Virus record (IMG/VR): IMGVR_UViG_3300032322_002561
Span: 172,310 to 236,309 of that record
Reading direction: 5' to 3' (one strand)
DNA length: 64,000 nucleotides
Below the pieces are notes generated by a model. It did no database searches, was not told the origin of the DNA, and saw only the letters and a list, made by a program, of their open reading frames with translations. This document shows positions 34,097 to 53,133 of the stretch, one piece after another (the stretch's first letter is position 1; every line of letters begins with the position of its first letter). Made by a program: the position numbers and the translations under genes.

Positions 34097-34807
34097 CTAA
34101 TTTTGTTGACGCAGTTTTGCCAAACCCAGAATCTGCAGAATTCGTATGTACATCCACCCAATATCAAATTCCCACCAACGTTGGCTGAATTTGGCACTGG
34201 CTCCGTCAGCATGGTGACCGTTGTGTAGTTCTTCGCCGCCGATCCAAATGGCTATGGGCCATAGATTACGGCTGGTATCTTTGGTGTCGACGTTACGGTA
34301 GCCCCACCAGTGGCTGAGTCCGTTTATGACACCGGCCGCCCAGAACGGAATCCAGATCATCTGCACACCCCAGACCAACAAGCCCCAGGGACCAAACACA
34401 GCCAGGTCAATAATGAACATGATCATAATGCCTAGTCGGCTGTGCCGGGCATACAAATTGCGCTCGATCCAGTCGTCGGGGGTGCCTGTGCTTAGATCTT
34501 TGACCATGCCACGATCCCGGCTGGCCTTGTGATATAGAAATGCACCACCAAACAGCACACGCCAAATACCGTAGATTTGAGGACTGTGCGGGTCTCCTGG
34601 TTGGTCACTCTTTTGGTGATGTCGGCGGTGTATGGCCACCCATTCACGAGTGATCATGCCAGTGGTGAGCCACAACCAAAAACGCATGAAGTGAACTACC
34701 ATAGGATGAAACTGCACAGCTCTGTGAGCTTGGCTTCTGTGCAGATACAGCGTCACACAGGCTATGGTAATTTGGACCATTACCAAGGTCGCGATGATTG
34801 CGGACAT
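34097..34807 (-). CDS. desA: Delta-9 type fatty-acid desaturase
   Basis: His boxes HRSQAH, HRRHH, HNGHH; DPHSP; GGEELHN; WWEFDIGW. Confidence 0.93.
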   Translation of the reverse strand: MSAIIATLVMVQITIACVTLYLHRSQAHRAVQFHPMVVHFMRFWLWLTTGMITREWVAIHRRHHQKSDQPGDPHSPQIYGIWRVLFGGAFLYHKASRDRGMVKDLSTGTPDDWIERNLYARHSRLGIMIMFIIDLAVFGPWGLLVWGVQMIWIPFWAAGVINGLSHWWGYRNVDTKDTSRNLWPIAIWIGGEELHNGHHADGASAKFSQRWWEFDIGWMYIRILQILGLAKLRQQN

Positions 34808-34824
34808 GTTTATATTTAGCTGTT

Positions 34825-35382
34825 TTAAACGCAGCTTTCCTGGAAAGGAAAAAACGTACGGTTCAAAAATAGGGTAAAAATGCGTTTGCTCACATCCGCG
34901 GTTTCTTGTTGCAGACTGTACCAACTGGATGGTGCCAATCGTGCCACCACATCGATGTCGCCATCACGATGGATCATTTGCAAATCGTGTTTTTCAGCCA
35001 AGTGCGCCATGGTGGTGTTCCATTTCACACAATGCAGATACAACTGTTTGTAGCCACGATTTCTAGCCCAGGTGATACCTTCTTTTAGTAGATCACTGCC
35101 AAGGCCAAAGTTGCGATATTCCTCATACACACTGAGACCAAACTCTATGCTAAGGCTGTTGATCTGGGCAATGTGCAACACTCCTAACCATCCGGTACAG
35201 TTGTAACTGACTAGAAATGTGTGCTGAGTGGGATCATTTTGGATGCGTGCTACTAGATCATCAATATAATCATCTGAAACAACAATACCAAAATACATTC
35301 TACGATCTTCAGCACTGAGGCCCTTGAGCCAGTGCCCAAATTTTGGGTATTCTTCAGTGTTGAGAAATCGTGTGCTGATCAT
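34825..35382 (-). CDS. GNAT-family acetyltransferase
   Basis: EFGLSV...YR..GLGS.L......A..RG...L...C...N..M..LA.K. Confidence 0.85.
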   Translation of the reverse strand: MISTRFLNTEEYPKFGHWLKGLSAEDRRMYFGIVVSDDYIDDLVARIQNDPTQHTFLVSYNCTGWLGVLHIAQINSLSIEFGLSVYEEYRNFGLGSDLLKEGITWARNRGYKQLYLHCVKWNTTMAHLAEKHDLQMIHRDGDIDVVARLAPSSWYSLQQETADVSKRIFTLFLNRTFFPFQESCV

Positions 35383-35513
35383 TAGTTTTTATACAGTGAC
35401 TGGGCCTCGGACCATTTTTGATTGCGGGCTAGTTCTGCTGCATATTTGGCTTCGCCAGTGGCGCATAGGATTTCCCATATGGTGCTTGCTATTGCTTTGA
35501 TTGAGTTTAACAT
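35382..35513 (-). CDS. Small hypothetical protein (43 aa)
   Basis: MLNSIKAIA start with AAGGA SD; TAATG coupling. Confidence 0.6.
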   Translation of the reverse strand: MLNSIKAIASTIWEILCATGEAKYAAELARNQKWSEAQSLYKN

Positions 35514-35643
35514 AATTTTTCCTTTTGAGTAAATTAAACAGTAGAGACTCATGGTTTCTACTGAGATATTTATGTTGTGGTGCAACAGATAATAACAAAA
35601 CTTAATGGTAAACGCAACTAAATATTTCACAAGGAGAATCAAC

Positions 35644-35874
35644 ATGTTGAAATTTATTGCTAACTTTTTTGGATCTAAAAAAGCTCCAGAATCCACTGTG
35701 CCTTACAAAGTGGAACCACCTGTAGATGTTCCCGTTGTGAATTCCCCCAAACCAGTGGTCAATGGTCGCAAACAAGCACCTAAAAAATCCACCACAACCA
35801 CAGCACCAGGCAATAGCCCGGCAAAGAAATCTTCTGCCAGCAAAAAAGCCACCACTACAAAAAATAAAAAATAA
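35644..35874 (+). CDS. Small basic protein
   Basis: AAGGAG SD, TAAATA at 35619-35624; K/T/P-rich tail. Confidence 0.7.
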   Translation: MLKFIANFFGSKKAPESTVPYKVEPPVDVPVVNSPKPVVNGRKQAPKKSTTTTAPGNSPAKKSSASKKATTTKNKK

Positions 35875-35929
35875 ACTAGTTGTAATTTAATTCATGGTCC
35901 CTGTGTAAATAATTTACACGGGGATTGTC

Positions 35930-36373
35930 ATGAAAACAACAATAATAGGCGCCCTGGCGATGGTGTTTGTCAACGGGAGCTATGCTGCAGAACTGGTACA
36001 TCAGTTCAATTCACCTTCCTTTTCGGGTCAGGGATATTCAAGTCATGTCTTGACCATTGAGCAACTGGAGGCCAGCCGTAGAAAAACCATAGCCGACGCA
36101 CAACGAGCCGCACAAGAAAAAGCCGAACGCGATGCCAAAAATACCAATCTGGCCAAGTTCTTGGTCAATGTTGAGTCACGAATTTACGCTCAACTCAGCA
36201 AGCAGTTGGCTGATGCTATGTTTGCTGACAACAATGCCACTTCGGGTACCATGGATTTCCAAGGAACCAACATTTCGTGGGTCAAAACCGGCACAGATGT
36301 CACACTAACCATTATAGAGTCCAACGGTAATAGAACAGACATCACAGTGCCTCTTGCGAGTTTTGCGTTCTAA
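35930..36373 (+). CDS. csgF: CsgF-like curli assembly protein
   Basis: Signal peptide, then ELVHQFNSPSFSG (cf. CsgF FQF.NP.FGG); F..N.ESRI..QL; G.M; T.I.VP. Confidence 0.75.
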   Translation: MKTTIIGALAMVFVNGSYAAELVHQFNSPSFSGQGYSSHVLTIEQLEASRRKTIADAQRAAQEKAERDAKNTNLAKFLVNVESRIYAQLSKQLADAMFADNNATSGTMDFQGTNISWVKTGTDVTLTIIESNGNRTDITVPLASFAF

Positions 36374-37410
36374 TGCGTAAACTGCTCTTGATCCTTTTTG
36401 TTGCGGTGTTGCCGGGTTGTGCCTACATACACATGGAAGTGGCACAGGAAGAACCTGTGAAGGTTACACCCAAAAAAAATCTCATGGATCAATTGCCGGT
36501 GCTGGATGGTCCGCCCATGACCGTGGCCGTGTACGGATTCAGAGATCTTACCGGACAGAACAAACCCAATGATCGTTTGGCCCTGTTTTCAAAGGCAGTA
36601 ACACAAGGTGCTGAAGTATTTCTCATCAAGAGCCTACAAGATTCAAAGAACTGGTTCCGTGTGGTGGAACGTGTGGGTCTGGACAACTTGATCAAAGAAC
36701 GTCAGTTAATAAGAAATCAGCGTGAAGTCTACGAAGGCAAAGAAGCCAAGCCCTTAAAGCCCTTGACCGTGGCCGGTATCTTGCTGGAAGGCGGTATCAT
36801 AGGCTATGACAGCAATATCAGGTCAGGCGGTAATGGTGCCAGGTTCCTGGGCATAGGTGGCAGCCAGCAGTATCGTGTGGACGAAGTCACAGTGAGTCTT
36901 AGATTGATCAGTATCAGTAGTGGCGAAGTTCTGATGACCAATGCTGTGACCAAGACCATATATTCAACAGCACACAATGTGGGCGTGTTGAGATTTGTGG
37001 ATGCTGGAACCAAGGCCCTGGAGTTGGAAAATGGACAGGCGTTGAACGAGCCCACTACCTATGCTGTGCGTGTGGCCATTGAACAAGCCGTGTATGAACT
37101 GATTGTGGAAGGTCAGAAGAAAGGCTTATGGAGTTACCGGCGTCCTGAGGAGAAACGCAATGATGTCAATCCTGCTACAACAGGCACAGAAACAAAGCCA
37201 TTGCCACCAAAAGCCACTGTGGTCACAATAATGAAACTGCGTGAAGCATCATATATCTATCGTGATCCAGACGAACGTAGCCAGCGTACCTGGATGTTGA
37301 AGGAAAACACAGAATTGACCGTGACACCAGGCCAGGATGGCTGGGTTGCGGTACAAGATTCAGCCGGTCGCAAGGGCTGGGTCAAAAGTGACAGGTTAAT
37401 TCAGCCATGA
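36373..37410 (+). CDS. csgG: CsgG curli secretion channel lipoprotein with C-terminal SH3-like domain
   Basis: Lipobox LPGC; VAVY.F.D.TGQ.KP, S.AVTQG, WF.VVER.GL.NL.KERQ.IR, EGGI.GYDSN, QYR.D.VTV.LR; tail W..V....G..GWV. Confidence 0.92.
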   Translation: MRKLLLILFVAVLPGCAYIHMEVAQEEPVKVTPKKNLMDQLPVLDGPPMTVAVYGFRDLTGQNKPNDRLALFSKAVTQGAEVFLIKSLQDSKNWFRVVERVGLDNLIKERQLIRNQREVYEGKEAKPLKPLTVAGILLEGGIIGYDSNIRSGGNGARFLGIGGSQQYRVDEVTVSLRLISISSGEVLMTNAVTKTIYSTAHNVGVLRFVDAGTKALELENGQALNEPTTYAVRVAIEQAVYELIVEGQKKGLWSYRRPEEKRNDVNPATTGTETKPLPPKATVVTIMKLREASYIYRDPDERSQRTWMLKENTELTVTPGQDGWVAVQDSAGRKGWVKSDRLIQP

Positions 37411-37516
37411 ACGCCTGTAAATATACAAGTGCGATAATCGCACTTGATAATAATAAGGTCGCAAAGACCAAGGAGCTGATTGGACAATAACAAAAACAAA
37501 TCCAATCTGAAAACAA

Positions 37517-38143
37517 ATGGAAAAGAGATGGACAGGCACTGGCGGACTGCCGAGAAAATTATCCGCAATTCTGGTGGTCGCTGCAATGTGGTCACTGGGT
37601 GCTCAGGCCAATGAAGTTTACATTGAACAGGTAGGCAGTGGTTCAACCATAAACATCACGCAACAGGGCACAGACAACCGCATTGGTGACAGCACCACCG
37701 CGGCCTATATAGGATCAGGATCCAACACAGTGACCATAGATCAGATTGGTTCAACCAACGCTCTGGACATGGTGGTCAATGGCGCTGGTACAGATGTCAC
37801 GGTCAGCACTACCGGTGACAACAACACGCAAACCATTAACTGTGGGACCACACAGTCGGCGGGCTGTAGCGGCAGCGTGATCAGTGCTACCATTGCTGGT
37901 GACAGCAACATCACCACGCAAAATCTTGGTGCTGGAGCCAATCATACCAGTAACATTTCCATCACTGGAGACACCAACACTGTTACCCATACCAGCACTG
38001 CCACAGGTACTACTTTGGCAGATATTACTGTGTCGGGCAATACCAACACAGTGGCAGTCACACAATCGGGAATGTTGAACAAGAGTGTCACAGTTACCAG
38101 CACTGGCAACAGTAATACTATTAATATTACTCAGTCAGACTAG
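37517..38143 (+). CDS. Curlin-like secreted repeat protein
   Basis: Signal peptide plus N/T/G/S-rich repeats of type N.V.I.Q.G..N. Confidence 0.75.
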   Translation: MEKRWTGTGGLPRKLSAILVVAAMWSLGAQANEVYIEQVGSGSTINITQQGTDNRIGDSTTAAYIGSGSNTVTIDQIGSTNALDMVVNGAGTDVTVSTTGDNNTQTINCGTTQSAGCSGSVISATIAGDSNITTQNLGAGANHTSNISITGDTNTVTHTSTATGTTLADITVSGNTNTVAVTQSGMLNKSVTVTSTGNSNTINITQSD

Positions 38144-39164
38144 TTGGGCTTCAGTGGGCCGCGTGGTTGAACAGACCGGACCCACTGAAATAGTGCGCAA
38201 CAAAAAGAGTCTGAGCAGTAGTGTGAATGCACCTGTGGAGATGTTGGACACTATTGTTACTGCCCGTGCCAAGGCCAAAGTGGAGTTTGTGGACAAGACC
38301 ACGGTCAACATTACTGAGCAGAGCAAGATACTCATAGATGACTTTGTGTATGACCCCCGGGCCGGATCGGGCAAGTTGGCCATGAAGATGGTACAAGGCA
38401 CTGCCAGATATGCGTCGGGTCAGATAGCCAAGAACTCACCACAGAATGTAAACATAACCACACCCACTGCCGCTGTGGCCGTGCGTGGCACAGACTTCTC
38501 AATGACCGTAGATGAACTAGGCCGTAGTCTTATCATGTTGTTGCCCAGTTGCGATGCCAAGTCTTGTGTAACAGGATCAATCAGTGTGAGCAATGACGGT
38601 GGATCTGTGATCTTGGACGTGGCCTATCAGGTCACTGTGGTCACAAGTTTATCAACACCTCCTTCTGCGCCCACGGTGATACAGATTGACCCCAGCAACA
38701 TCAACAACCTGCTGATCGTGGCACCACCATCGGCGGTTCGTGAGGCCCTACAACCCGTGCAACAGACAGCGTTGGATATTAATTTTCTAAACAAGGACCT
38801 GCTGAAGTATGACGAGCTGAATGTGAATTATCTGGAAAAATTCCGGCAGTTGGATGTGAACTTTTTGGACATTGATTTCCTGGTCAATTTGCTGGATCTC
38901 AGCAATCAACAACTCAGTGCCAGCCTGGATGCCATGAGTCGTGAAGCCAGCTTGTTGCCGGCCTATGATCCCAATTCGGGACTGAGATATTTTTTTAACG
39001 ATGATGAAAGCAAGGTCACTGTGCGACTAAACACCGGGCACATGGCCGAAGTCACTGTGGGAGTAGAGCACGATGCTGTAGTAACCGTAAATCAAGCAGG
39101 TTGGGCAGTCACACAACAGATCAACCGTGGTGGGACCAGCATAATTAATATTGTACAGAAATAA
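38085..39164 (+). CDS. FecR-domain exported protein
   Basis: Signal peptide; D.I.T......F.D.T.V...EQS...ID.FVY, G..RY.SG, I.TPTA...VRGTDF. Confidence 0.88.
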   Translation: MSQLPALATVILLILLSQTSWASVGRVVEQTGPTEIVRNKKSLSSSVNAPVEMLDTIVTARAKAKVEFVDKTTVNITEQSKILIDDFVYDPRAGSGKLAMKMVQGTARYASGQIAKNSPQNVNITTPTAAVAVRGTDFSMTVDELGRSLIMLLPSCDAKSCVTGSISVSNDGGSVILDVAYQVTVVTSLSTPPSAPTVIQIDPSNINNLLIVAPPSAVREALQPVQQTALDINFLNKDLLKYDELNVNYLEKFRQLDVNFLDIDFLVNLLDLSNQQLSASLDAMSREASLLPAYDPNSGLRYFFNDDESKVTVRLNTGHMAEVTVGVEHDAVVTVNQAGWAVTQQINRGGTSIINIVQK

Positions 39165-39174
39165 GGAGATGACC

Positions 39175-39345
39175 ATGGAAGGAAGCACAATCAAGACCTT
39201 GGCCGAATACATTGTATCTTTACATCATAAAAAACAACAATTAGATCAACAATACGGCAATTCAGTAACTGACACCAACGGTGTAGAACAAGACTGGGAG
39301 GATACTGAATACGTTGAAACGTTTTGGCCACCCAACACTAAATAA
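39175..39345 (+). CDS. Small hypothetical protein
   Basis: AAGGAG SD directly after FecR stop. Confidence 0.55.
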   Translation: MEGSTIKTLAEYIVSLHHKKQQLDQQYGNSVTDTNGVEQDWEDTEYVETFWPPNTK

Positions 39346-39390
39346 CTTTATTAAAATAAAACTAATAGCAGTATATAATAAGGAGCTAAC

Positions 39391-39669
39391 ATGGGAGAAT
39401 TCTTCCGACTAGTCGCAGAACTAGGATTTCCAATAGCTGCTGCCATAGCAGCCGGATACTTTGTATTCCTGACTCTCAAATTTATTCTCGCTGGTGTTAC
39501 CAGCAGTGTCAAAGGCATGGCCGGCATAATCGGCGCACTAGACAAACGTGTGGCCACCATGAATCACGATGTCATGCGCATAGACACCAAAGTTAGCCAT
39601 GCTCTGGGACTACAGCCGGATCTAGATCGTATTGCTCGTGCTGAACAAAGCGATGCCAGGAGAGATTAA
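39391..39669 (+). CDS. Single-TM coiled-coil protein (YvrJ/holin-like), paralog A
   Basis: LGFPIAAA..AGYFVF TM, then LD.R...M..D..R.D.KV. Confidence 0.75.
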   Translation: MGEFFRLVAELGFPIAAAIAAGYFVFLTLKFILAGVTSSVKGMAGIIGALDKRVATMNHDVMRIDTKVSHALGLQPDLDRIARAEQSDARRD

Positions 39670-39857
39670 TGTTATACGTTGATTACGCCTGGGATTTAGA
39701 ACCCAATAGAATTCTATTAGACGAAGAACTTGACATTGACCGGTTGGGCTGGCGAGGCGGTGACTATTTTCAAGTCAAAAACGTCAATGGTCGTGCCATG
39801 TTGGTCAAGGTCGATCCCTTGGTAAAATTCCTAAAGGACGGAGAAAAAAATGAATAA
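39669..39857 (+). CDS. Small AbrB/SpoVT-like beta-barrel protein
   Basis: LGW..GD.F.V....G...L.K; TAATG coupling. Confidence 0.6.
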   Translation: MLYVDYAWDLEPNRILLDEELDIDRLGWRGGDYFQVKNVNGRAMLVKVDPLVKFLKDGEKNE

Positions 39858-39996
39858 ATGGACAGCCTGGTATGACAGCTTGCCCGAACATACCAAACGA
39901 TATCTTGATACTCGAGCAGTATGGCATGATCGTGATTTGTTTGTGGTTGCAGCTATGACTTTTGTGCTGGGTATTTTTGTTGGACTGGCCATATAA
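39850..39996 (+). CDS. Small membrane protein (48 aa, not in ORF track)
   Basis: MNKWTAWYDSLPEHTKRYL...FVLGIFVGLAI; overlaps both neighbours. Confidence 0.7.
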   Translation: MNKWTAWYDSLPEHTKRYLDTRAVWHDRDLFVVAAMTFVLGIFVGLAI

Positions 39997-40187
39997 TGTT
40001 AGAAGTTACCTACGCATTTATTGGATTTATTATGGGCGGTGCGGCATTGATCATCAGTCTATATGTCTGGTTGACCATGGACGAGGCTTTAGAAAATGGT
40101 CGTTCGTGGATGCAACTTAATCGCGAGTTGAAAGAAAAAATAGAACAGATGGAACGTGCTAGTCCATCATCACCTTGGAAGAAATAA
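39996..40187 (+). CDS. Small membrane protein
   Basis: N-terminal TM plus coiled coil; TAATG coupling. Confidence 0.65.
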   Translation: MLEVTYAFIGFIMGGAALIISLYVWLTMDEALENGRSWMQLNRELKEKIEQMERASPSSPWKK

Positions 40188-40188
40188 C

Positions 40189-40479
40189 ATGGACATTGTA
40201 ACCTTAATCAACAAATACGGATTCCCTATAGTGGCCGCCGGCGGCATGGGATATCTCATTTTCTACGTATGGAAATGGGCCACCACAGAAATCAAACCTG
40301 TACTTAGCGAGGCAAATACAACTCTCATTGCCTTGATTGATCGTATCCGTATGTTAGACAATGATTTAATCAGACTCAATCAAAAGGTCAATGTGACCTT
40401 GCACCTGCGTGGCCGAAGCATCGAAGCCGAACGCATGGCCCAAGACGAAACAATTAATACACCTAAGAACGACAAATAG
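40189..40479 (+). CDS. Single-TM coiled-coil protein (YvrJ/holin-like), paralog B
   Basis: YGFPIVAAGGMGYLIF TM, then LIDRIRMLDNDLIRL..KV. Confidence 0.75.
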   Translation: MDIVTLINKYGFPIVAAGGMGYLIFYVWKWATTEIKPVLSEANTTLIALIDRIRMLDNDLIRLNQKVNVTLHLRGRSIEAERMAQDETINTPKNDK

Positions 40480-40616
40480 AACTGGCCTTGATTCCATTCA
40501 ATGTGAACTGACTGACCCACTTGTCAGTGTCACTGTACAAGCCAGGAATGCGATGTGGCAGATACCAAAGATTCAAAAAAGTCCAGACAGCACAATCCCA
40601 ATACCAATCCGTGTAA

Positions 40617-42632
40617 CTATTTAGATGTTGCCTTATAGGTTCCCATCCAGTCACTTGGCTTACCTGCCGCAAGTCGTTCATCCATGGCCCCATAATATGC
40701 CTCCAGTTCTGGGCAGGCTTGTTTGCATCCTGGAATCAAGGCCTGTGCTTTTTTCCATTCGCCTGCGTAATACAAGCTGATAAAATCTTTATGCAAATCT
40801 GTTTCTGTTGCCAATGTATATATGCGTACACCTTCGTTCTTGCCTTTGACAGCTATACAGTCTAGTTCCGTAACCGAGTAGGTATCTCGGACAAGCTCAG
40901 CAGTACGCGATCCCAATACAATGCGAACGCCATAAGGCTTTGACTGACCTTCGAGTCGGCTTGCCAGATTAACGCTGTCACCAAGGCAGGTGTAATCAAA
41001 ACGCTGACTGCTGCCCATATTACCAACGACAACGGTACCAGTGTTGATACCAAGGCCCATGCCAAAAGGCGGAACGCCTTCTGCACTGATTTCACGATTG
41101 AATTCATCCAAACTCTCCATCATTTGTAAAGCAGTACGCACAGCATTTCGAGCATGATCTGGATCATCCAAGGGTGCGTTCCAAAATGCCATCTGTGCAT
41201 CGCCAATATATTTGTCCAAGGTACCTGCATTTTCAAGTATCTTGGCAGTCATGGCTGTCATATAACGATTCATAATCTTTGTGAGTCCTTGCACGTCGGC
41301 ACCATAGTGTTCGCTGATGGTGGTAAATCCACGCACATCTGTGAACATGATGCTGAGTTCTCTGCTTTCACCGCCCAAGGTCAGTAGCTCGGGATTCTTT
41401 TGTAGACGTTCAACCATGGCTGGACTCAAGTATGTGCCAAACTGTTTCTTTATTTGTTGTTTAGCAAGATATTCAGATACAAAACGTACTCCGTAACTGT
41501 GAAGAAGCACAAGCACAAGGCCAGCAACAACCAAAGTGCCGTCCGTGAGCCAAGCATGACTCGAGTACAGAGCATGAGGAAGCCATAAACAAACACCAAG
41601 AACAACAACACTACCAGCAATACCAACATAGGTCCATCTCCCTAAAAATATCAGTGCTACACTTAGCAACACCAATGTTAAAATCTCTGCACCGTCGGCC
41701 CAGTCAGGTCTGGTGATGGCTGGACGTATTTTGTTGGCCATCACTGTAGAAATAACTGCGGCCTGCAAGTCCTGTGGCAACATTTCACCCAGACTGGTGG
41801 CCACTGGATTGGCCAAGCCCGCAGCACTGACACCTACAATCACTATCTCACCATCAAAGTCCTTTGGTAGATTCATCAAACTATGACGTTCTGGCGTTAG
41901 ACTCCAGTCAATCCAGATTCTACTGAGACTGTCTGTGGTTATCGGACCAAACTGTGGAATGCGTATTTTTTCCACACCAGATTCGTTGACTTTGACTTGT
42001 ATGGTTGAGTCGCCTGCGGCCACACGCATGACTTCTACGGCTAGACTGGGATATAATTGTCCGTTGTGGGCCACAACCATGGGCATGCGTCTGACCACAC
42101 CATCTATTTCAGGAAAAGTGTTGACTATGCCTACTCCAGCGGCGGCCTGTTCCACTGCAGGGATATTGGCGATGATACCACCGTAGTTCACAAAAGCATC
42201 TTGTCCATAGGGACCTATCTGCGCTGATCCTGGAGCTCGAGGTTGGTTGCGAGTCTGTGTGCTGCCTATGCTGGGCAACACTACTGGATGGCGTTTTAAG
42301 GTTTGGACGTAAGTTTGATCTCGGCCAAAACGATCGCTATCTGGAGTGAGCACGTTAAAAACAACAAGCCCAGCATTACGGCTGTAAAGGTCCTCAATGA
42401 TGGCAGCATATCTATCACGGCTAAAAGGAAATTGTCCATAACGTTCCAAAGCTTTCTCATCTATGTTTACCACATGCACTCCGGTGACTTCTGCTGGCTT
42501 GCTGGTCACAAGAGTATCAAAATAACGTAATCTTACACTTTCTACAAAGGCAGGATCTGCTATGCGTATACCCACAATCACAGCCAGGGTAAACAAGGCT
42601 GTCCAGGGGCTGGTTAGAATTTTTCTTAGCAT
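40617..42632 (-). CDS. CHASE2-domain class III adenylate cyclase
   Basis: TM, CHASE2 (V.IDE..L..YGQ.P..R; DG.VRR.P; Y.SL..E), 3 TM, cyclase FTDVRGFT, DKYIGDA.MAFW, GINTG...VGNMG, YT.LGD.VNLASRLEG, VKGK. Confidence 0.95.
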   Translation of the reverse strand: MLRKILTSPWTALFTLAVIVGIRIADPAFVESVRLRYFDTLVTSKPAEVTGVHVVNIDEKALERYGQFPFSRDRYAAIIEDLYSRNAGLVVFNVLTPDSDRFGRDQTYVQTLKRHPVVLPSIGSTQTRNQPRAPGSAQIGPYGQDAFVNYGGIIANIPAVEQAAAGVGIVNTFPEIDGVVRRMPMVVAHNGQLYPSLAVEVMRVAAGDSTIQVKVNESGVEKIRIPQFGPITTDSLSRIWIDWSLTPERHSLMNLPKDFDGEIVIVGVSAAGLANPVATSLGEMLPQDLQAAVISTVMANKIRPAITRPDWADGAEILTLVLLSVALIFLGRWTYVGIAGSVVVLGVCLWLPHALYSSHAWLTDGTLVVAGLVLVLLHSYGVRFVSEYLAKQQIKKQFGTYLSPAMVERLQKNPELLTLGGESRELSIMFTDVRGFTTISEHYGADVQGLTKIMNRYMTAMTAKILENAGTLDKYIGDAQMAFWNAPLDDPDHARNAVRTALQMMESLDEFNREISAEGVPPFGMGLGINTGTVVVGNMGSSQRFDYTCLGDSVNLASRLEGQSKPYGVRIVLGSRTAELVRDTYSVTELDCIAVKGKNEGVRIYTLATETDLHKDFISLYYAGEWKKAQALIPGCKQACPELEAYYGAMDERLAAGKPSDWMGTYKATSK

Positions 42633-42659
42633 AGTGTATTTAATGTAAATATCAGCACT

Positions 42660-43010
42660 ATGTATTGGGGATATCATTTACTGTTAGATTGCAGCGGCTG
42701 TAAAAACATAGACAGCCGAGACAATATCTACCGTTTTGTCAAAGATTTGGTAGCTCGTATAGACATGACTGCACATGGCGAACCCATTATTGAATACTTG
42801 TTACCGGGTGATCCCAAACAGGGCTACAGTTTGATGCAGTTAATTACCACTTCAAACATTGCTGGACACTTTATGGAACTGGATGGCACCGCTTACTTTG
42901 ATATATTCAGTTGCAAAGAATTTGATATAGAAACAGCCAAACAAGTGGTGCACGATTATTTTGCACCCGAACGTATGCGTGTGAATTTCTTAACACGTCA
43001 TGCCGATTGA
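42660..43010 (+). CDS. speD: S-adenosylmethionine decarboxylase proenzyme-like
   Basis: G.HL.LD, GYS...LI.TS.I..H, Y.D.FSC. Confidence 0.8.
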   Translation: MYWGYHLLLDCSGCKNIDSRDNIYRFVKDLVARIDMTAHGEPIIEYLLPGDPKQGYSLMQLITTSNIAGHFMELDGTAYFDIFSCKEFDIETAKQVVHDYFAPERMRVNFLTRHAD

Positions 43011-43740
43011 GTTTCCTGTCAAGGTTCCTTACACCACAGCACCCAACATGGTGCGCAACACAGGCGAAGTTTTTAATCGTCGACCCAATAAGCGCATCCT
43101 AGAACTCAAACGCCAAGAACTGATCCGGCATAACAAAGATCTGTACGCCCAAACTGACCTGGCAGCCAATTTACGTCTGGTAGGACATGCTTTAGACTTT
43201 TGCGGCCTGCCCAACTATTATGGCCTACAACAGTTGGCCATGAGCATCGAAGAAGACATTGCTATCATGCACAAGGGTAGGTTAGAAGCTATTTGTTTTT
43301 GTTTTCCTAGTAGCTGGATACCTCGAGAACGCATAGGTCAGACCTTGGCAGACATACATGCACCAGTGGCCGACGGTGACAAGTTAAGACAAATGAGCCA
43401 ACGCATAGCCGAGACCATGGCTGATCCAGCACAAGGCAGTTTCCGCAGACATGTATGGACCATTGCCAACAGCGGCGAGCTCAGTCAACATCCGGCCAGC
43501 AAGAGCAATCTGGTGCCCACCAGCATCGAAGATCTTTGGTTTAGACTGGAAACACAGACCACGCATCCTGTGGGCGATGGTGTTACTAGTTTGTTTTTTG
43601 TGCGAGTGGAAACAGAACCATTGTCAATGATTTGGAATGACTCGCACCGACGCCAGATCTTGATAGACAGTGTCAACAGCATGTCCGATGCTGTGTTGAC
43701 CTACAAAAACTTACACGAGATCAAAAAACTGCTGATCTAG
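43000..43740 (+). CDS. DUF3445 (heme-dependent oxidative N-demethylase alpha-like) protein
   Basis: EDI, CFPS.W...ER.G..L..IH.PV, R..W, R.E.QT, LF. Confidence 0.8.
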   Translation: MPIEFPVKVPYTTAPNMVRNTGEVFNRRPNKRILELKRQELIRHNKDLYAQTDLAANLRLVGHALDFCGLPNYYGLQQLAMSIEEDIAIMHKGRLEAICFCFPSSWIPRERIGQTLADIHAPVADGDKLRQMSQRIAETMADPAQGSFRRHVWTIANSGELSQHPASKSNLVPTSIEDLWFRLETQTTHPVGDGVTSLFFVRVETEPLSMIWNDSHRRQILIDSVNSMSDAVLTYKNLHEIKKLLI

Positions 43741-44027
43741 TTCATTAATAATCTGATAAGTCCAACTGTGTCAATGGTGATCATCAGCAGGTAGTTGGCC
43801 AGCATTCCTGAACTACGACGAGTCCATGCGGCCCAGGCCAGCAGGCTACAAGTTACAATAAACGCAGGATAGATCCAGTAAAAGGGCGGGTTAGGCAAGG
43901 TCACTGCCATGGTTACAGCCACCACCACACTCACAATCCAGGCTACAAACTCGGCGGCAAAGCGTAAAGGATAACTGCGATAATCTTCCTGTATCCAACT
44001 CCAGGTTCGTTGTATAGTATCTATCAT
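43737..44027 (-). CDS. Small membrane protein
   Basis: Three hydrophobic helices; ATGA coupling to uvsE. Confidence 0.75.
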   Translation of the reverse strand: MIDTIQRTWSWIQEDYRSYPLRFAAEFVAWIVSVVVAVTMAVTLPNPPFYWIYPAFIVTCSLLAWAAWTRRSSGMLANYLLMITIDTVGLIRLLMN

Positions 44028-45055
44028 ACCAATCCTAACTCCACTGCACGATTGTAAACCTGCTCACTGGCCAGGTTCTTGCCTTTGCTTTCGCACTGTA
44101 TGTCAAACTGGTCCCAGAAGCCCAACACCCAGTCAGTGGCGGCCTGATTCCAATAAAAATCTGAGTGTGCTCGTAATTTTTGTTTTTTGAATCCAGACTC
44201 TAGCAGACTTGCATGATCTGGTTTATGGTGAACGGCATGGTCAACAAGTAGATCTTCACGGCTAACGCTGTAGTGCATAGCAGGACGCACACCGCGCCAA
44301 CTGTCAACAACACGTTTGACCCTATCGTCATCAGGCTGGATGTATTCGCCCGTTTTAATCCAGTGATGATGAACATCAAGAACAGTAGGAACAATATCAG
44401 CCAGCTCCAGGCAATGATCCAGCCCATGTGTTATTTCCTCGTTTTCAAAGGTGATACAGTTGCGTGCTTCTGTACTTAGTCGAGACCAGGCACGACGAGC
44501 ACCAGCGGCACCGGCCTTGCCGGAGATATGCACATTGATCTTCATGTCTTGAAACTGACGACCAAAGCCCATCCAACGAGCCATGTCGGCATGATACTCG
44601 AACTCTTCTATACTGCGATCTACGATTTCTTGGCTTTCACTACCCAACACACAAAACTGCCCTGGATGAAAGCTGACTCGCACATCTAGTCTACGGGCGG
44701 TTTCGCCAATGGGTGCAAAAATACGTTCACAGTGTGCTTGGATCTCAGGGCGTTGCCACCAGGCCTTCCAATCCTTTTCTGTGTAGCCCTGTAGCATTTC
44801 TGATCCTAAGCGCACCATCCTACGATTGGCCGGCAATGAAGCCACACGCTCAATCAGTCGGACAGCAGCCGCAGTATTGTGGTTCATGATGTCCCACTGG
44901 CGTTGTTCGGCTTCCTCAGGATGCTCACGCAACCAACGCATGGTCGTGCTACGGCCATTTAGGTCACGGTCTTTGGCATTGACTTTCATGCCGCCGCATT
45001 CGCTGGGATCATTGAGCCATTTGCAACAGAAACCAATGCGTTTGAGTGTAGTCAT
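44024..45055 (-). CDS. uvsE: UV damage endonuclease UvsE/UVDE
   Basis: RIGF.C, R.SFHPGQF.VL, N.H, EN.E, LD.HHHW, HYS, AHSD, E.K.K. Confidence 0.92.
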   Translation of the reverse strand: MTTLKRIGFCCKWLNDPSECGGMKVNAKDRDLNGRSTTMRWLREHPEEAEQRQWDIMNHNTAAAVRLIERVASLPANRRMVRLGSEMLQGYTEKDWKAWWQRPEIQAHCERIFAPIGETARRLDVRVSFHPGQFCVLGSESQEIVDRSIEEFEYHADMARWMGFGRQFQDMKINVHISGKAGAAGARRAWSRLSTEARNCITFENEEITHGLDHCLELADIVPTVLDVHHHWIKTGEYIQPDDDRVKRVVDSWRGVRPAMHYSVSREDLLVDHAVHHKPDHASLLESGFKKQKLRAHSDFYWNQAATDWVLGFWDQFDIQCESKGKNLASEQVYNRAVELGLV

Positions 45056-49271: not shown

Positions 49272-50063
49272 ATGAAACTGGCGTTTGACTTAATTTCTGA
49301 TCTACATCTTGAAACATGGCCCACAGCCTTTGATTGGCAAGGTCTTGCAACCAGTCCTTTTTGCATTGTAGCCGGAGACGTATCACGTGATCGCAACATC
49401 CTAATAGAAACCCTGCGGCATCTTGGCACCTGTTATCAGGCTGTGTTTTACATAGATGGCAATGATGAGCACCGGCATTATTATGATGATCTAGCCTCCA
49501 GCTACAAGGATCTTGAAAAGCAGTTGCAGAATATTCCACATGTTACCTATCTACAAGGCAATGTTGTGGTAATTGATGGTGTAGCAATTTTGGGTACCAA
49601 TGGCTGGTGGGGATTTGATTTTGACAAAAACATTGATCCCACACAGTGCGCTTTATGGTATCAAGAAAAAGTTGCCTGTGCCGGACACACTGTGCGCAGT
49701 ATTGGCAACATGGCCACAACAGATGCTATATATCTTACCAACAGTGTGACCAAACTACAGGCTCACCTGGATGTGCAACAAATAATTGTGGTCACTCACA
49801 CAGTGCCTAGCCCCGAATTGGTGTCACATGACATTGATCTAGTAGGCGACTATCGGTTCAATTGTATAGGTAACGAAGGAATGTTGCAGGCCTTGCAGGC
49901 AGACTTTGGCAACAAAATCCATACTTGGTGTTTTGGACACTATCATGGCAGTGTGGATCAAGTCAAACACGGTGTAAGATTTGTCAACAACTGTCGGGGT
50001 CGACACGACACAAAATGGTGCAAACATGTATTCCACCCCTTGCGTATTGAAGTAGAAATTTAG
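49272..50063 (+). CDS. Calcineurin-like metallophosphoesterase
   Basis: SDLH.E, VAGD, GNDEH, THTVP, FGHYH, NN.RG. Confidence 0.88.
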   Translation: MKLAFDLISDLHLETWPTAFDWQGLATSPFCIVAGDVSRDRNILIETLRHLGTCYQAVFYIDGNDEHRHYYDDLASSYKDLEKQLQNIPHVTYLQGNVVVIDGVAILGTNGWWGFDFDKNIDPTQCALWYQEKVACAGHTVRSIGNMATTDAIYLTNSVTKLQAHLDVQQIIVVTHTVPSPELVSHDIDLVGDYRFNCIGNEGMLQALQADFGNKIHTWCFGHYHGSVDQVKHGVRFVNNCRGRHDTKWCKHVFHPLRIEVEI

Positions 50064-50371
50064 AGTACGTCTTCGGGTTCCAGTTTGACCTGCAACGGAT
50101 AACTTTGAGCTCGCGCACTCACAGTGACTTCGATGCCTTTTTGTTCAGCTATTTCATACGGCAACACAGCCACAATGGCACTGCCTTCTTGATGTATATC
50201 AATGGTGATACGTTCGGCACTTTCAGCAGTGTAATCAAAATGTTCTATCAAACTTTCTATCACAAATTCCATGCTGGTTTGATTGTCATTGAGATATATT
50301 ACACGAAACAGGGGCGGTTCTTTGATTTTTTCTACAGGTTTAATTCTTGTACGTGGTTCTGCATTTGCCAT
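50060..50371 (-). CDS. clpS: Clp protease adaptor ClpS
   Basis: P.LF.V..LND..T.MEFV..L...F, IH..G.A.V, EIAE.K, YPL...E. Confidence 0.93.
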   Translation of the reverse strand: MANAEPRTRIKPVEKIKEPPLFRVIYLNDNQTSMEFVIESLIEHFDYTAESAERITIDIHQEGSAIVAVLPYEIAEQKGIEVTVSARAQSYPLQVKLEPEDVL

Positions 50372-50386
50372 GAGTTTTCCTTGAAT

Positions 50387-50411
50387 CAGTAGCGGGACAG
50401 TCCCGCTACTG
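50387..50411. terminator. Stem-loop between hsp20 and clpS
   Basis: CAGTAGCGGGACAGTCCCGCTACTG perfect inverted repeat. Confidence 0.55.
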
Positions 50412-50425
50412 TATTTACTATTTTA

Positions 50426-50863
50426 TTAGTCTTGATAGGTAATTGCAATACTCTTTGGCTTGGCACTGTCAGGAATCTTGCGTTCTAGATACACGGTCAA
50501 GATACCATCCTTTTGTCCAGCACTGTTTACTTCCACATATTCTCCTAGACTAAAGGTACGAATGAACTTTCTTGCACTGATGCCCTGATGTCTATAAATG
50601 TAGTCAGGATTCACAGGTTCATTTTTTTCACCTGTAATGATCAGTTCGCCCTCTTTTACCGTGATATCAATTTCGCCTTGACCAAAGCCGGCCACGGCTA
50701 GTTGTATCTCGTAAAGATTTTCCATGGTTTCTACAATATTGTAGGGTGGATAGTTTACATTTGATGCATGGTCAAGTTGGTTTACAATGCGATCAAACAA
50801 TCTATCTACACCAATGGCATTGCGATAAAATGGTGTCAAATCATAACTTGTAATCTTAGTCAT
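50426..50863 (-). CDS. Small heat-shock protein Hsp20 (IbpA-like)
   Basis: IG.DR.F, NYPPYNI, LAVAGF, H.GIS.R.F.R.F.L, DGIL.V.L. Confidence 0.95.
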   Translation of the reverse strand: MTKITSYDLTPFYRNAIGVDRLFDRIVNQLDHASNVNYPPYNIVETMENLYEIQLAVAGFGQGEIDITVKEGELIITGEKNEPVNPDYIYRHQGISARKFIRTFSLGEYVEVNSAGQKDGILTVYLERKIPDSAKPKSIAITYQD

Positions 50864-50918
50864 TTGTTTTCTCCTTATTAAGCAAGTTGACTATTGGCGG
50901 CCCCAAACGGGCACCGCC
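50864..50918 (-). promoter_or_regulatory. ROSE-like RNA thermometer leader (copy 2, hsp20)
   Basis: GGCGG-UG-CCC/GGG-G-CCGCC stem, then CUUGCUUAAUAAGGAG. Confidence 0.75.
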
Positions 50919-50930
50919 TACTGAGTTTCC

Positions 50931-52811: not shown

Positions 52812-52870
52812 TTGCGTTCTCCTTATGTTAAGCAAGATTTTTTTGTAGCCCGACCATCGGCACTACAAAA
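52812..52870 (-). promoter_or_regulatory. ROSE-like RNA thermometer leader (copy 3, dnaK)
   Basis: UUUUGUAG-UG-CCGA/UCGG-G-CUACAAAA stem, then CUUGCUUAACAUAAGGAG. Confidence 0.7.
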
Positions 52871-52872
52871 CT

Positions 52873-52903
52873 TATTTATACAACAATTTTTCTACTGTGT
52901 CAA
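52873..52903 (-). promoter_or_regulatory. Composite promoter for dnaK
   Basis: TTGACA-N17-TATAAA whose -10 is also an exact T4 late box TATAAATA. Confidence 0.65.
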
Positions 52904-52905
52904 AT

Positions 52906-53133
52906 CTAATATAATTTTTTGGGCAATTGCTGGCTGGCCAATTGTTTTTGCCAACGTTTAGAAGCAGCATTGCGTTTGAGTTTGCGTCTAGTAGTGGGTT
53001 TGATATAGCACTCACGATCTCGCAAGTCATTGAGGATTCCTGAAGCCTGTATCTTCTTTTTAAATTTGCGCAGGGCTTTTTCGACATTGCCGTCGTTTAC
53101 CAGCACACTGCGTCCGCGAAAATAATTACTCAT
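52906..53133 (-). CDS. rpsU: Ribosomal protein bS21
   Basis: V....VEKALRKFKKK....G...DLR.RE.Y.KPT..RK. Confidence 0.93.
   Translation of the reverse strand: MSNYFRGRSVLVNDGNVEKALRKFKKKIQASGILNDLRDRECYIKPTTRRKLKRNAASKRWQKQLASQQLPKKLY

What the first reader, a model, noticed from the sequence alone, without database searches (positions are those of the whole stretch)
35930..42632. Phage curli-like secretion operon converging on a CHASE2 adenylate cyclase: candidate surface-sensing cAMP system
Seen: csgF-like, csgG, curlin-like and FecR-domain genes plus six small, mostly membrane, genes on +, meeting tail-to-tail with a CHASE2/class III cyclase on -. The cyclase has all catalytic motifs (FTD, DKYIGD, T, N..SR; Lys specifies ATP). 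The units carry TAAATA late-type boxes (35906, 37418, 39339, 42637). Known: CsgG/CsgF form the type VIII curli pore; FecR proteins relay outer-membrane signals across the periplasm; FecR and CHASE2-cyclase genes are neighbours in some bacteria; csgF/csgG have been reported in pelagimyophages without a function. Inference: the phage builds a trans-envelope relay (CsgFG pore + curlin-like ligand -> FecR -> CHASE2 -> cAMP) that lets the infected cell sense secondary adsorption or neighbours and tune lysis timing or CRP-dependent transcription, rather than make biofilm curli (no csgE/csgD seen).
Basis: partly seen in the sequence, partly recalled or inferred. Interest (0 to 1): 0.88.

Follow-up and report, generated by a model that had tools for sequence, protein, structure and literature searches.

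The report
Phage curli-pore, FecR, cAMP-cyclase gene module
A large phage carries a tightly linked set of genes for a curli-type outer-membrane pore, a curlin-like fibre subunit, a periplasmic FecR-type protein and a membrane sensor adenylate cyclase. The set is real and very widespread, but it was already described in marine pelagiphages in 2022 and its function is still unknown.

Summary
The linkage is not chance. In IMG/VR, 37 of 38 cyclase-anchored loci and 45 of 45 CsgG-anchored loci with enough flank carry the whole set, and so do 18 of 18 pelagiphage-type loci. Two conserved small membrane paralogs also belong to it.

The cluster is not new. Wittmers et al. 2022 (PMC9599517) described "HK"-CsgF-CsgG-CsgA/B-FecR-(CsgA/B)-adenylate cyclase in pelagiphages. 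This window is a rearranged copy in a 236-kb, 45% GC phage: the cyclase is inverted, CsgG is fused to SH3, and there is no second curlin.

New points from this work:
- FecR-domain protein plus CHASE2 cyclase is a recurrent bacterial two-gene sensor pair, found without curli genes.
- The phage FecR-like protein co-evolves with CsgF, CsgG and curlin (r about 0.9). The periplasmic CHASE2 domain tracks it weakly (r 0.3). The catalytic domain does not.
- The FecR-like C-terminus resembles curlin repeats.
- A Caulobacteraceae chromosomal copy nests inside the phage clade.

The "TAAATA late boxes" are not enriched. Sensing of superinfection or control of lysis timing is untested. Verdict: a new member of a known kind.

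The parts
35898..35922 (.). 25-nt near-perfect palindrome just upstream of csgF. Its role is unknown.
   Evidence: Sequence read. Unique in the window (expected 0.01).
35930..36373 (+). CsgF-like protein with a signal peptide. The N-terminal motif F-x-[S/N]-P-x-F-x-G-x-G corresponds to the CsgF segment that inserts into the CsgG barrel.
   Evidence: Pfam CsgF 3e-16; phrog_35372 6e-50. Motif residues are 94-99% conserved in 107 relatives.
36373..37410 (+). CsgG lipoprotein (lipobox L-P-G-C) with an extra C-terminal bacterial SH3 domain (aa 295-342).
   Evidence: Pfam CsgG 3e-54 and SH3_4 7e-7. PDB CsgG 1e-49. Lipobox Cys 99% conserved. The SH3 tail is found in about 20 related loci.
37517..38143 (+). 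Secreted curlin-repeat protein (repeats of N-x3-I-x-Q-x-G-x-x-N), predicted to form a beta-solenoid. Candidate fibre subunit or substrate of the pore.
   Evidence: Pfam Curlin_rpt 1e-7. Alignments A2/A4. AlphaFold2 pLDDT 85, all-beta with about 14 strands. Fold hits are only generic beta-helices, with the CsgA fibril at rank 8.
38085..39164 (+). Periplasmic FecR-like protein: signal peptide, FecR domain (aa ~25-200), low-confidence linker with LDxNFL repeats, and a C-terminal six-strand domain ending in a curlin-like strand.
   Evidence: Pfam FecR 7e-13. Alignments A1/A3. AF2 model. Foldseek top hit is the PupR C-terminal cell-surface signalling domain 6ovk, E 4e-5. hhalign of the C-terminus against curlin-like proteins gives E 3e-4, prob 40%.
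39175..39345 (+). Small soluble ORF (56 aa) with a good ribosome-binding site. Conserved only in the closest relatives, where it sits between FecR and the cyclase.
   Evidence: Sequence. tblastn hits in L004/L084 (56%) and L019 (42%).
39391..39669 (+). Small single-pass membrane protein 'o92' (phrog_18771), a conserved component of the module.
   Evidence: PHROG 2e-35. Present in nearly all related loci. Alignment A5.
39669..39857 (+). Small soluble ORF 'o62', an accessory gene found next to o92 in about 30 related loci.
   Evidence: tblastn.
39850..39996 (+). Small ORF 'o48' with a C-terminal transmembrane segment. Accessory, seen in about 13 loci.
39996..40187 (+). Small ORF 'o63' with an N-terminal transmembrane segment. 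Found only in the closest relative.
40189..40479 (+). Small membrane protein 'o96', a paralog of o92 (phrog_18771) and a conserved component of the module. The published pelagiphage description calls these genes 'HK'.
   Evidence: PHROG 8e-33. Alignment A5. No kinase similarity in Pfam or in a PDB profile search.
40617..42632 (-). Membrane receptor adenylate cyclase: N-terminal TM helix, periplasmic CHASE2 domain, three TM helices, and a cytoplasmic class III (Lys/Thr, IIIb-type) catalytic domain.
   Evidence: Pfam; phrog_35576 3e-259. PDB alignments to Cya2, CyaB and CyaC. Residue conservation and hydropathy.

Best explanation
This is a rearranged copy of the viral type VIII secretion (curli-like) module with FecR and adenylate cyclase, already described in pelagiphages. 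Here it sits in a 236-kb phage of a different, higher-GC lineage.

**Shown**
- CsgG is a lipoprotein and CsgF keeps its pore-inserting N-terminal motif, so they can be expected to form the outer-membrane channel.
- The curlin-repeat protein is secreted and is predicted to be a beta-solenoid.
- The FecR-like protein is periplasmic.
- The cyclase has a periplasmic CHASE2 domain and an intact cytoplasmic ATP-type catalytic site.
- All of these, plus two small membrane paralogs, are inherited together.

**Inferred**
The FecR-like protein is the coupling piece. Its N-terminal FecR domain is the partner of CHASE2, as in the bacterial FecR/CHASE2 gene pairs. Its curlin-like C-terminus engages the curlin subunit or the CsgGF channel. 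The infected cell's cAMP synthesis would then report the state of curlin export or assembly at the envelope.

**Open**
Whether the ultimate input is external (another phage, a surface, neighbouring cells) or internal (secretion flux) is not known. What reads the cAMP is also not known.
For: - Domain calls and motifs.
- Co-occurrence: 37/38 cyclase-anchored and 45/45 CsgG-anchored loci; 18/18 pelagiphage-type loci with at least 6 kb downstream. The same six GenBank phages are hit by every component.
- The set stays together despite rearrangement: 112 loci co-directional, 13 convergent like the window.
- Bacterial FecR-domain genes lie directly beside full-length CHASE2 cyclases in at least 20 of 73 loci, with no CsgG, CsgF or curlin. 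FecR plus CHASE2 kinase operons are in the literature.
- The FecR-like model matches the PupR cell-surface signalling domain.
- Distance correlations: FecR with CsgF/CsgG/curlin, r 0.87-0.91. CHASE2 with FecR, r 0.30. CHASE2 with curlin, r 0.34. Both CHASE2 correlations have p 0.001 and persist after controlling for CsgG. The catalytic domain with FecR gives r 0.06, not significant.
- The C-terminal 70 aa of the FecR-like protein align end-to-end with the C-terminus of the curlin-like protein.
Against: - No physical interaction was tested, and no multimer modelling was possible.
- The FecR/CHASE2 co-variation is weak. Permutation tests ignore shared ancestry.
- The catalytic domain is so conserved that its distances carry little signal.
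- The hhalign match is only 40% probability.
- PMC9599517 reports that some podovirus copies lack the cyclase. The secretion block with FecR can therefore exist without it.
- No cNMP-binding receptor was found in the window or the phage loci (a single-sequence search only).
- Locus L072 has the cyclase and the small membrane pair but no secretion block within 10 kb.
Confidence: 0.4

Rival explanations
1. Fibre-making adhesion module. The channel exports curlin-like subunits that form amyloid-like fibres on the infected cell. These fibres aggregate cells ('sibling capture') or shield the cell from other phages. FecR, the cyclase and the small proteins only regulate production. This is the view of PMC7029224 and PMC9599517.
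For: - CsgF, CsgG and one or two curlin-repeat proteins are always present.
- The curlin-like protein has Q-x-G-x-x-N repeats and a confident beta-solenoid model.
- The published papers report metatranscript expression.
Against: - Buchholz et al. saw no clumping in Melnitz infections.
- This view does not explain why a periplasmic sensor cyclase and a FecR-type protein are kept with the secretion genes across hundreds of phages.
- Phage genes have no obvious need for a cAMP loop to be expressed.
- It is compatible with the best explanation rather than exclusive of it.
Confidence: 0.25
2. Lysis-timing or leak pore. CsgG, with or without CsgF, acts as an ungated outer-membrane channel, since no CsgE is present. 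It depolarises or permeabilises the envelope to time lysis (Buchholz et al. 2022) or to import cofactors. The two small membrane proteins would act like holin/antiholin-type factors.
For: - No CsgE, CsgC or CsgD was found among the module ORFs.
- o96 has a weak match to a holin PHROG (E 8e-4 over 19 residues).
- The o92/o96 N-termini weakly resemble membrane-active leaderless two-peptide bacteriocins (E 0.02-0.04).
- The o96 helix is Gly/Ala-rich and weakly hydrophobic.
Against: - All these similarities are below significance.
- The CsgF plug motif and the curlin substrate are strongly conserved, which points to a working secretion channel rather than an open hole.
- An outer-membrane pore alone does not depolarise the inner membrane.
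Confidence: 0.15
3. Independent host reprogramming. The cyclase simply raises host cAMP to rewire metabolism. It sits near the curli genes only because both lie in a hypervariable accessory region.
For: - The cyclase phylogeny is largely decoupled from the secretion block, and its position and strand vary.
- The window region is rich in accessory genes: speD, desaturase, GNAT, UvdE and chaperones.
Against: - Linkage is near-perfect in three independent samples.
- It survives inversion and relocation, across 37-100% protein identity.
- The cyclase keeps a periplasmic sensor domain whose usual bacterial neighbour, FecR, is in the module.
Confidence: 0.1
4. Envelope-triggered exclusion or abortive switch. 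The sensor cyclase makes a cyclic nucleotide that activates a membrane effector when a second phage attacks. This would be analogous to cyclic-nucleotide defence systems.
For: In the Caulobacteraceae chromosomal copies, a Pycsar-type membrane effector (PF18967 PycTM) directly follows the cyclase (L245 and L163). A calcineurin-like phosphoesterase gene directly precedes csgF, and an MscS channel with a cNMP-binding domain lies further upstream.
Against: - No such effector or cNMP-binding domain was found in the phage loci.
- The specificity residues are adenylate-type, not pyrimidine-cyclase-type.
- The evidence is a single bacterial lineage.
Confidence: 0.1

Closest known systems
Viral T8SS (curli) cluster of pelagiphages: 'HK'-CsgF-CsgG-CsgA/B-FecR-(CsgA/B)-adenylate cyclase. 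Sources: Wittmers et al. 2022, PMC9599517; earlier partial reports in PMC7029224 and PMC9004378; isolates HTVC008M and Melnitz.
   Same: - Same protein families in the same core order.
- The window proteins are 37-58% identical to those of Melnitz and HTVC008M.
- The same two small upstream paralogs are present.
   Different: - The host phage is a 236-kb, 45% GC contig with DnaK, Hsp20 and ClpS, not a 140-kb low-GC pelagimyophage.
- The cyclase is inverted (convergent).
- The small membrane pair has moved to between FecR and the cyclase.
- CsgG carries an SH3 domain.
- There is no second curlin gene.
E. coli curli secretion system (CsgG/CsgF channel, CsgA/CsgB subunits, CsgE, CsgC, CsgD)
   Same: - CsgG matches at E 1e-49 and has a lipobox.
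- The CsgF N-terminal motif is kept.
- The curlin repeat signature Q-x-G-x-x-N is present.
   Different: - No CsgE, CsgC or CsgD.
- The CsgG constriction loop keeps only the Phe (E. coli Y51/N55 equivalents are Asn/Leu).
- The curlin-like protein is longer and has a conserved Cys pair.
- It is linked to FecR and a cyclase, which canonical curli operons lack.
Bacterial FecR-domain protein plus CHASE2 sensor gene pairs: the CHASE2 cyclases found here in Alphaproteobacteria, Myxococcota and others; the Burkholderia 'BiofilmReg' LysM-FecR plus CHASE2 histidine kinase operon, PMC5192318.
   Same: - A periplasmic FecR-domain protein is encoded beside a CHASE2 membrane sensor.
- Identity is about 30% over the FecR domain.
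- The full-length CHASE2 cyclases match the phage profile at E 1e-100 to 1e-169.
   Different: - The bacterial pairs lack CsgG, CsgF and curlin, and often have a cNMP-binding protein nearby.
- The phage cyclases form a separate clade (100/100 support).
- The phage FecR protein has a curlin-like C-terminus.
[quoted passage not shown]
   Same: CHASE2 adenylate cyclases make cAMP in response to an extracellular protein signal, which requires an outer-membrane protein.
   Different: - NsrA is not a CsgG homologue.
- The receiver, Clr, is known in that system. No receiver is known here.
FecA-FecR-FecI and PupB-PupR cell-surface signalling
   Same: The FecR periplasmic domain fold is shared. The top structural match is the PupR C-terminal domain.
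   Different: - The phage protein has only a signal peptide. It has no cytoplasmic anti-sigma domain and no membrane anchor.
- No TonB-dependent transducer or ECF sigma factor lies next to it.

Membership tests
Viral T8SS-FecR-adenylate cyclase module (PMC9599517) | Co-located small 'HK' gene(s), CsgF, CsgG, a curlin-repeat gene, FecR and an adenylate cyclase. | tested here: met
   All are present within 35930-42632. Homologous to the Melnitz and HTVC008M clusters.
Viral T8SS-FecR-adenylate cyclase module (PMC9599517) | Conserved co-directional order ending in a second curlin gene and the cyclase. | tested here: not met
   The cyclase is on the opposite strand and there is no second curlin gene. 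The small pair lies after FecR. 13 of 126 related loci share the convergent layout. This is a layout variant, not an exclusion.
Curli type VIII secretion system | CsgG outer-membrane lipoprotein: sequence family plus lipobox Cys. | tested here: met
   Pfam 3e-54. PDB 1e-49. L-P-G-C lipobox; Cys 99% conserved.
Curli type VIII secretion system | CsgF with the N-terminal segment that plugs into CsgG. | tested here: met
   Pfam CsgF 3e-16. F-x-[S/N]-P-x-F-x-G-x-G is 94-99% conserved. There is no direct PDB sequence hit.
Curli type VIII secretion system | Secreted curlin-repeat subunit able to form amyloid fibres. | tested here: inconclusive
   The repeats and the beta-solenoid model are present. 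Fold matches are non-specific. Amyloid formation is not testable here.
Curli type VIII secretion system | Accessory factors CsgE, CsgC or CsgH, and the regulator CsgD. | tested here: not met
   No such Pfam hit in any module ORF or in neighbouring ORFs.
Class III adenylate cyclase (IIIb type) | Two metal-binding Asp, substrate Lys plus Thr/Asp, and transition-state Asn and Arg. | tested here: met
   Alignment to Cya2, CyaB and CyaC structures. D, K, D and R are invariant in 114 relatives. The Thr position is Thr in 88 and Asp in 25. The Asn position is Asn in 89 and Ser in 25.
Class III adenylate cyclase (IIIb type) | Measured cAMP synthesis. | not testable with these tools
   Needs an enzyme assay or cyaA complementation.
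CHASE2 membrane sensor | CHASE2 domain placed between an N-terminal TM helix and a TM cluster, i.e. periplasmic. | tested here: met
   Pfam CHASE2 2e-38. Hydrophobic segments at about 12-30 and 312-385 of the 671-aa protein.
FecR/PupR-type anti-sigma cell-surface signalling regulator | Periplasmic FecR domain. | tested here: met
   Pfam 7e-13. Foldseek hits 6ovk and 4m0h, E 4e-5 to 3e-4.
FecR/PupR-type anti-sigma cell-surface signalling regulator | Cytoplasmic anti-sigma domain with a membrane anchor, and a partner TonB-dependent transducer and ECF sigma factor. | tested here: not met
   The protein has only a cleavable-looking signal peptide before the FecR domain. None of the neighbouring ORFs searched is annotated as a TonB-dependent transducer or ECF sigma factor. 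It should not be filed as an iron-citrate regulator.
Histidine kinase (published label for the small upstream genes) | HisKA and HATPase domains. | tested here: not met
   The proteins are 92-96 aa with one hydrophobic helix. No Pfam hit at E <= 0.1. The profile search against PDB finds no kinase.
T4-type late promoter | TATAAATA upstream of late genes, enriched over chance. | tested here: not met
   One copy in 64 kb against 1.2 expected, and not in the module. TAAATA occurs 29 times against 27.7 expected.

The most novel reading that the evidence does not exclude
The module is a phage-built trans-envelope sensor. The FecR-like protein is a tether whose curlin-like C-terminus sits in the CsgGF channel or on the curlin fibre, and whose FecR domain contacts CHASE2. 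Events at the cell surface, such as a second phage, a neighbouring cell or a surface, would then change cAMP inside the infected cell. That cAMP change would set lysis timing or exclusion, with the two conserved small membrane proteins possibly acting as effectors.
Probability: 0.15. Interest if true: 0.8.

Novelty: new member of a known kind. Interest (0 to 1): 0.4.

Why it matters
The module is one of the most widespread accessory gene sets of large aquatic phages. At least 590 IMG/VR contigs carry the cyclase, and at least 3,033 FecR-like proteins were found. It gives infected cells an envelope apparatus that the hosts SAR11 and OM43 do not have, yet nobody knows what it does.

Reading FecR plus CHASE2 as a borrowed bacterial sensor pair, rather than as an iron regulator plus a generic cyclase, turns a vague "regulation" idea into specific binding and cAMP experiments. 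Those experiments could also show what CHASE2 domains and their FecR partners sense in bacteria, which is still unknown.

This window shows the module is not confined to pelagiphages and that it tolerates rearrangement.

Tried and rejected
- **T4-type late promoters.** TATAAATA and TAAATA counts are at chance. However, 13 of the 29 TAAATA copies lie 0-40 nt upstream of a same-strand start, against 2-25% for same-composition hexamers. Some local signal may therefore exist, but many copies are too close to the ATG to be a -10 element.\n- **Sigma-70 promoters and intrinsic terminators** in 35400-43100: at chance. No clear terminator lies in the convergent gap.\n- **Histidine kinase identity of the small proteins:** rejected.\n- **A phage-encoded cNMP receptor.** phmmer with the L245 cNMP-binding channel, PycTM and phosphoesterase found nothing in the window or the phage loci.

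Full report
**What is there.** The region 35930-42632 holds, on the + strand:
- a CsgF-like gene (Pfam 3e-16);
- a CsgG gene (3e-54) with an added C-terminal SH3 domain;
- a curlin-repeat gene (1e-7);
- a FecR-domain gene (7e-13).

On the - strand it holds a CHASE2 plus class III cyclase gene (2e-38 and 3e-22). PHROGs already contains a family for most of these.

CsgG matches solved E. coli CsgG at E 1e-49 over residues 1-265 and has an L-P-G-C lipobox. Of the three E. coli constriction residues, only the Phe is kept.

CsgF has no direct PDB sequence hit. Its N-terminal F-x-[S/N]-P-x-F-x-G-x-G motif is 94-99% conserved in 107 relatives.

The cyclase aligns to Cya2, CyaB and CyaC. It has both metal Asp residues, the ATP-specifying Lys, a Thr at the second specificity position, and the Asn and Arg of the transition state. 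Across 114 relatives, D, K, D and R are invariant. Hydropathy places CHASE2 in the periplasm and the catalytic domain in the cytoplasm.

Six small ORFs separate FecR from the cyclase.
- Two of them (39391-39669 and 40189-40479) are paralogs of phrog_18771 and are conserved parts of the module.
- The others are accessory or lineage-restricted.
- The ORF at 40409-40624 is doubtful.

**What genome it is.** The window is part of IMG/VR contig 3300032322_002561, which is 236 kb. It also encodes a tail-fibre protein, speD, UvdE, DNA ligase, DnaK, Hsp20, ClpS, a fatty-acid desaturase and many orphan ORFs. GC content is about 45%. It has no tRNA genes and no Rfam matches. Related loci carry T4-type replication genes.

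**Is the linkage real?** Yes.
- A scan with the cyclase found at least 590 viral contigs.
- Among cyclase-anchored loci with at least 5 kb on both sides, 37 of 38 also carry CsgF, CsgG, curlin and FecR.
- Among CsgG-anchored loci, 45 of 45 carry the cyclase.
- A third sample, anchored on the distant HTVC008M CsgG, gave 18 of 18 loci with at least 6 kb downstream. There, a second curlin gene sits before the cyclase.
- In GenBank phages, each component hits the same six records: four Melnitz and two HTVC008M. CsgG and the catalytic domain of the cyclase also give a few partial hits in unrelated records.
- The order CsgF-CsgG-curlin-FecR never varies. The cyclase and the small membrane pair move around it: 112 loci are co-directional and 13 are convergent like this window.

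**Prior art.** Two papers discuss only csgF/csgG in pelagimyophages and Melnitz, and neither mentions a cyclase or FecR. Wittmers et al. 2022 (PMC9599517) describes the full cluster in podo- and myo-pelagiphages: "HK", CsgF, CsgG, CsgA/B, FecR, a second CsgA/B and adenylate cyclase. That paper includes phylogenies, ocean-wide distribution and transcript evidence.
- It treats FecR as the ferric-citrate regulator and does not mention CHASE2.
- It notes that the cyclase is less often present in podoviruses.

The composition and co-occurrence are therefore known. This window adds a new lineage and a new layout.

**Where the parts come from.** A scan of 185,579 species genomes with a FecR-like alignment was searched with profiles built from the phage families. 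It gave two kinds of hit.
- Seven loci hold full-length FecR-like matches, and most of them carry most or all of the module. Those checked are either a phage contig binned into a MAG (L164 has a clamp loader and a ligase) or a real chromosomal island in Caulobacteraceae.
- The island (L162/L163/L245) is flanked by methylmalonyl-CoA mutase, acyl-CoA dehydrogenase and other housekeeping genes.
- The other 73 loci match only the FecR domain, at about 30% identity. At least 20 of them have a full-length CHASE2 cyclase directly adjacent, and none has CsgG, CsgF or curlin. Several also have a cNMP-binding protein nearby.

The literature adds FecR-domain plus CHASE2 histidine kinase operons. It also adds S. 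meliloti CHASE2 cyclases that sense an external protein through an outer-membrane barrel, NsrA.

In a cyclase tree, all module cyclases form one clade (100/100 support), separate from the bacterial FecR-adjacent ones. The Caulobacteraceae copy nests inside the phage clade. Capture from a phage is therefore the simpler reading. The nearest relatives of the Caulobacteraceae FecR protein (52-55% identity) sit in T4-like phage contexts.

**How the parts relate.** Pairwise distance matrices over 76 loci gave these correlations:

| Pair | r | Note |
|---|---|---|
| CsgF, CsgG, curlin and FecR with each other | 0.80-0.91 | evolve as one block |
| CHASE2 with FecR | 0.30 | p 0.001; still 0.20 after controlling for CsgG |
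| CHASE2 with curlin | 0.34 | p 0.001; still 0.26 after controlling for CsgG |
| CHASE2 with CsgG, controlling for FecR | -0.06 | not significant |
| Catalytic domain with FecR | 0.06 | not significant |

These are weak signals with known confounders, but they point the way a FecR-CHASE2 contact would predict.

The AlphaFold2 model of the FecR-like protein has three regions:
- a confident FecR domain;
- a poorly defined linker;
- a six-strand C-terminal domain.

Its best structural matches are the PupR cell-surface signalling domain and related anti-sigma factors. A small "cell surface anchoring domain" (5ix9) is a further lead.

The last 70 residues align end-to-end with the C-terminus of the curlin-like protein (hhalign E 3e-4, probability 40%).

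The curlin-like protein models confidently as an all-beta solenoid. It has no specific structural match.

**The small membrane pair.** These proteins are the most conserved in the module. They are not histidine kinases. Their N-termini weakly resemble leaderless two-peptide bacteriocins, and one has a marginal holin-PHROG hit. I treat these only as leads.

**Promoter claim.** The four TAAATA hexamers exist, but the hexamer is not enriched. The T4 late consensus is at chance.
- TAAATA does sit unusually often just upstream of start codons, frequently too close to the ATG to be a -10 box.
- The copy at 35906 is the loop of a unique 25-nt palindrome that overlaps the csgF ribosome-binding site.
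- The copy at 37418 abuts another hairpin.

The best-supported working model is a secretion-plus-signalling unit. In it, the FecR-like protein couples the curlin/CsgGF apparatus to the CHASE2 cyclase.

Noticed in passing
window 36373-37410 (aa 295-342 of CsgG): CsgG carries a C-terminal bacterial SH3 domain (SH3_4, 7e-7). The fusion occurs in about 20 related loci forming a sub-group, and it is absent from Melnitz, HTVC008M and E. coli CsgG. It might anchor the channel to the cell wall.
   Followed up: partly
window 35898-35922 and 37426-37446: A unique 25-nt near-perfect palindrome sits immediately upstream of csgF and overlaps its ribosome-binding site. A 9-bp-stem hairpin lies between csgG and the curlin gene. 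Their function is unknown.
   Followed up: partly
window, whole: TAAATA is not enriched overall. However, 13 of the 29 copies lie 0-40 nt upstream of a same-strand start codon, against 2-25% for hexamers of the same composition. This may be a phage-specific start-region signal, or a by-product of stop-start gene junctions.
   Followed up: partly
window 50060-55776 (- strand): A cluster of proteostasis genes: ClpS (50060-50371), Hsp20 (50426-50863), a DnaK about 68% identical to gammaproteobacterial DnaK (50931-52835), and an AAA+/Lon-like ATPase (53126-54325).
   Followed up: no
window 34097-34924 (-); also L005, L006, L087, L090, L092, L098, L099, L105, L121, L131-133: A fatty-acid desaturase gene recurs next to the module in many related loci, often directly after the cyclase. 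It may be a membrane-related accessory gene.
   Followed up: no
L245 5350-13617; L163 13545-14138; L162/L246: Chromosomal copy in Caulobacteraceae: phosphoesterase (Metallophos)-CsgF-CsgG-curlin-curlin-FecR-cyclase, without the small membrane pair. In L245 and L163 a Pycsar-type membrane effector (PF18967) directly follows the cyclase. L245 also has an MscS channel with a cNMP-binding domain and an IS240 transposase fragment upstream.
   Followed up: partly
L171, L172, L179, L183, L193, L195, L213, L225: Bacterial FecR plus CHASE2 cyclase pairs often have a cNMP-binding protein (channel-type or CRP-sized) within a few kb. This suggests complete three-part signalling cassettes.
   Followed up: no
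L180 6548-11506 (Pelagibacteraceae single-cell genome AG-920-J04): A SAR11 genome encodes its own FecR-domain protein. About 1.4 kb upstream is a protein that matches only the CHASE2 part of the phage cyclase profile, so it has a different output domain.
   Followed up: no
L072 (IMGVR_UViG_3300025120_009955): The only informative exception: the cyclase and the two small membrane genes are present, but CsgF, CsgG, curlin and FecR are absent within 10 kb on either side.
   Followed up: no
L024, L027, L028, L107, L108, L115, L081: In these loci, about 2.4 kb of extra DNA separates csgF from csgG. The inserted gene was not examined.
   Followed up: no
window 39391-39669 and 40189-40479; alignment A5: The two small paralogs, published as 'HK', have a conserved G-F-P-I start to a Gly/Ala-rich helix and a coiled-coil-like tail. 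Their first 42 residues weakly resemble enterocin 7A/7B (E 0.02-0.04).
   Followed up: partly
window 42660-43740 and 44024-45055: Accessory genes beside the module: S-adenosylmethionine decarboxylase (speD), a haem-dependent oxidative N-demethylase-like protein, and a UvdE UV-endonuclease.
   Followed up: no
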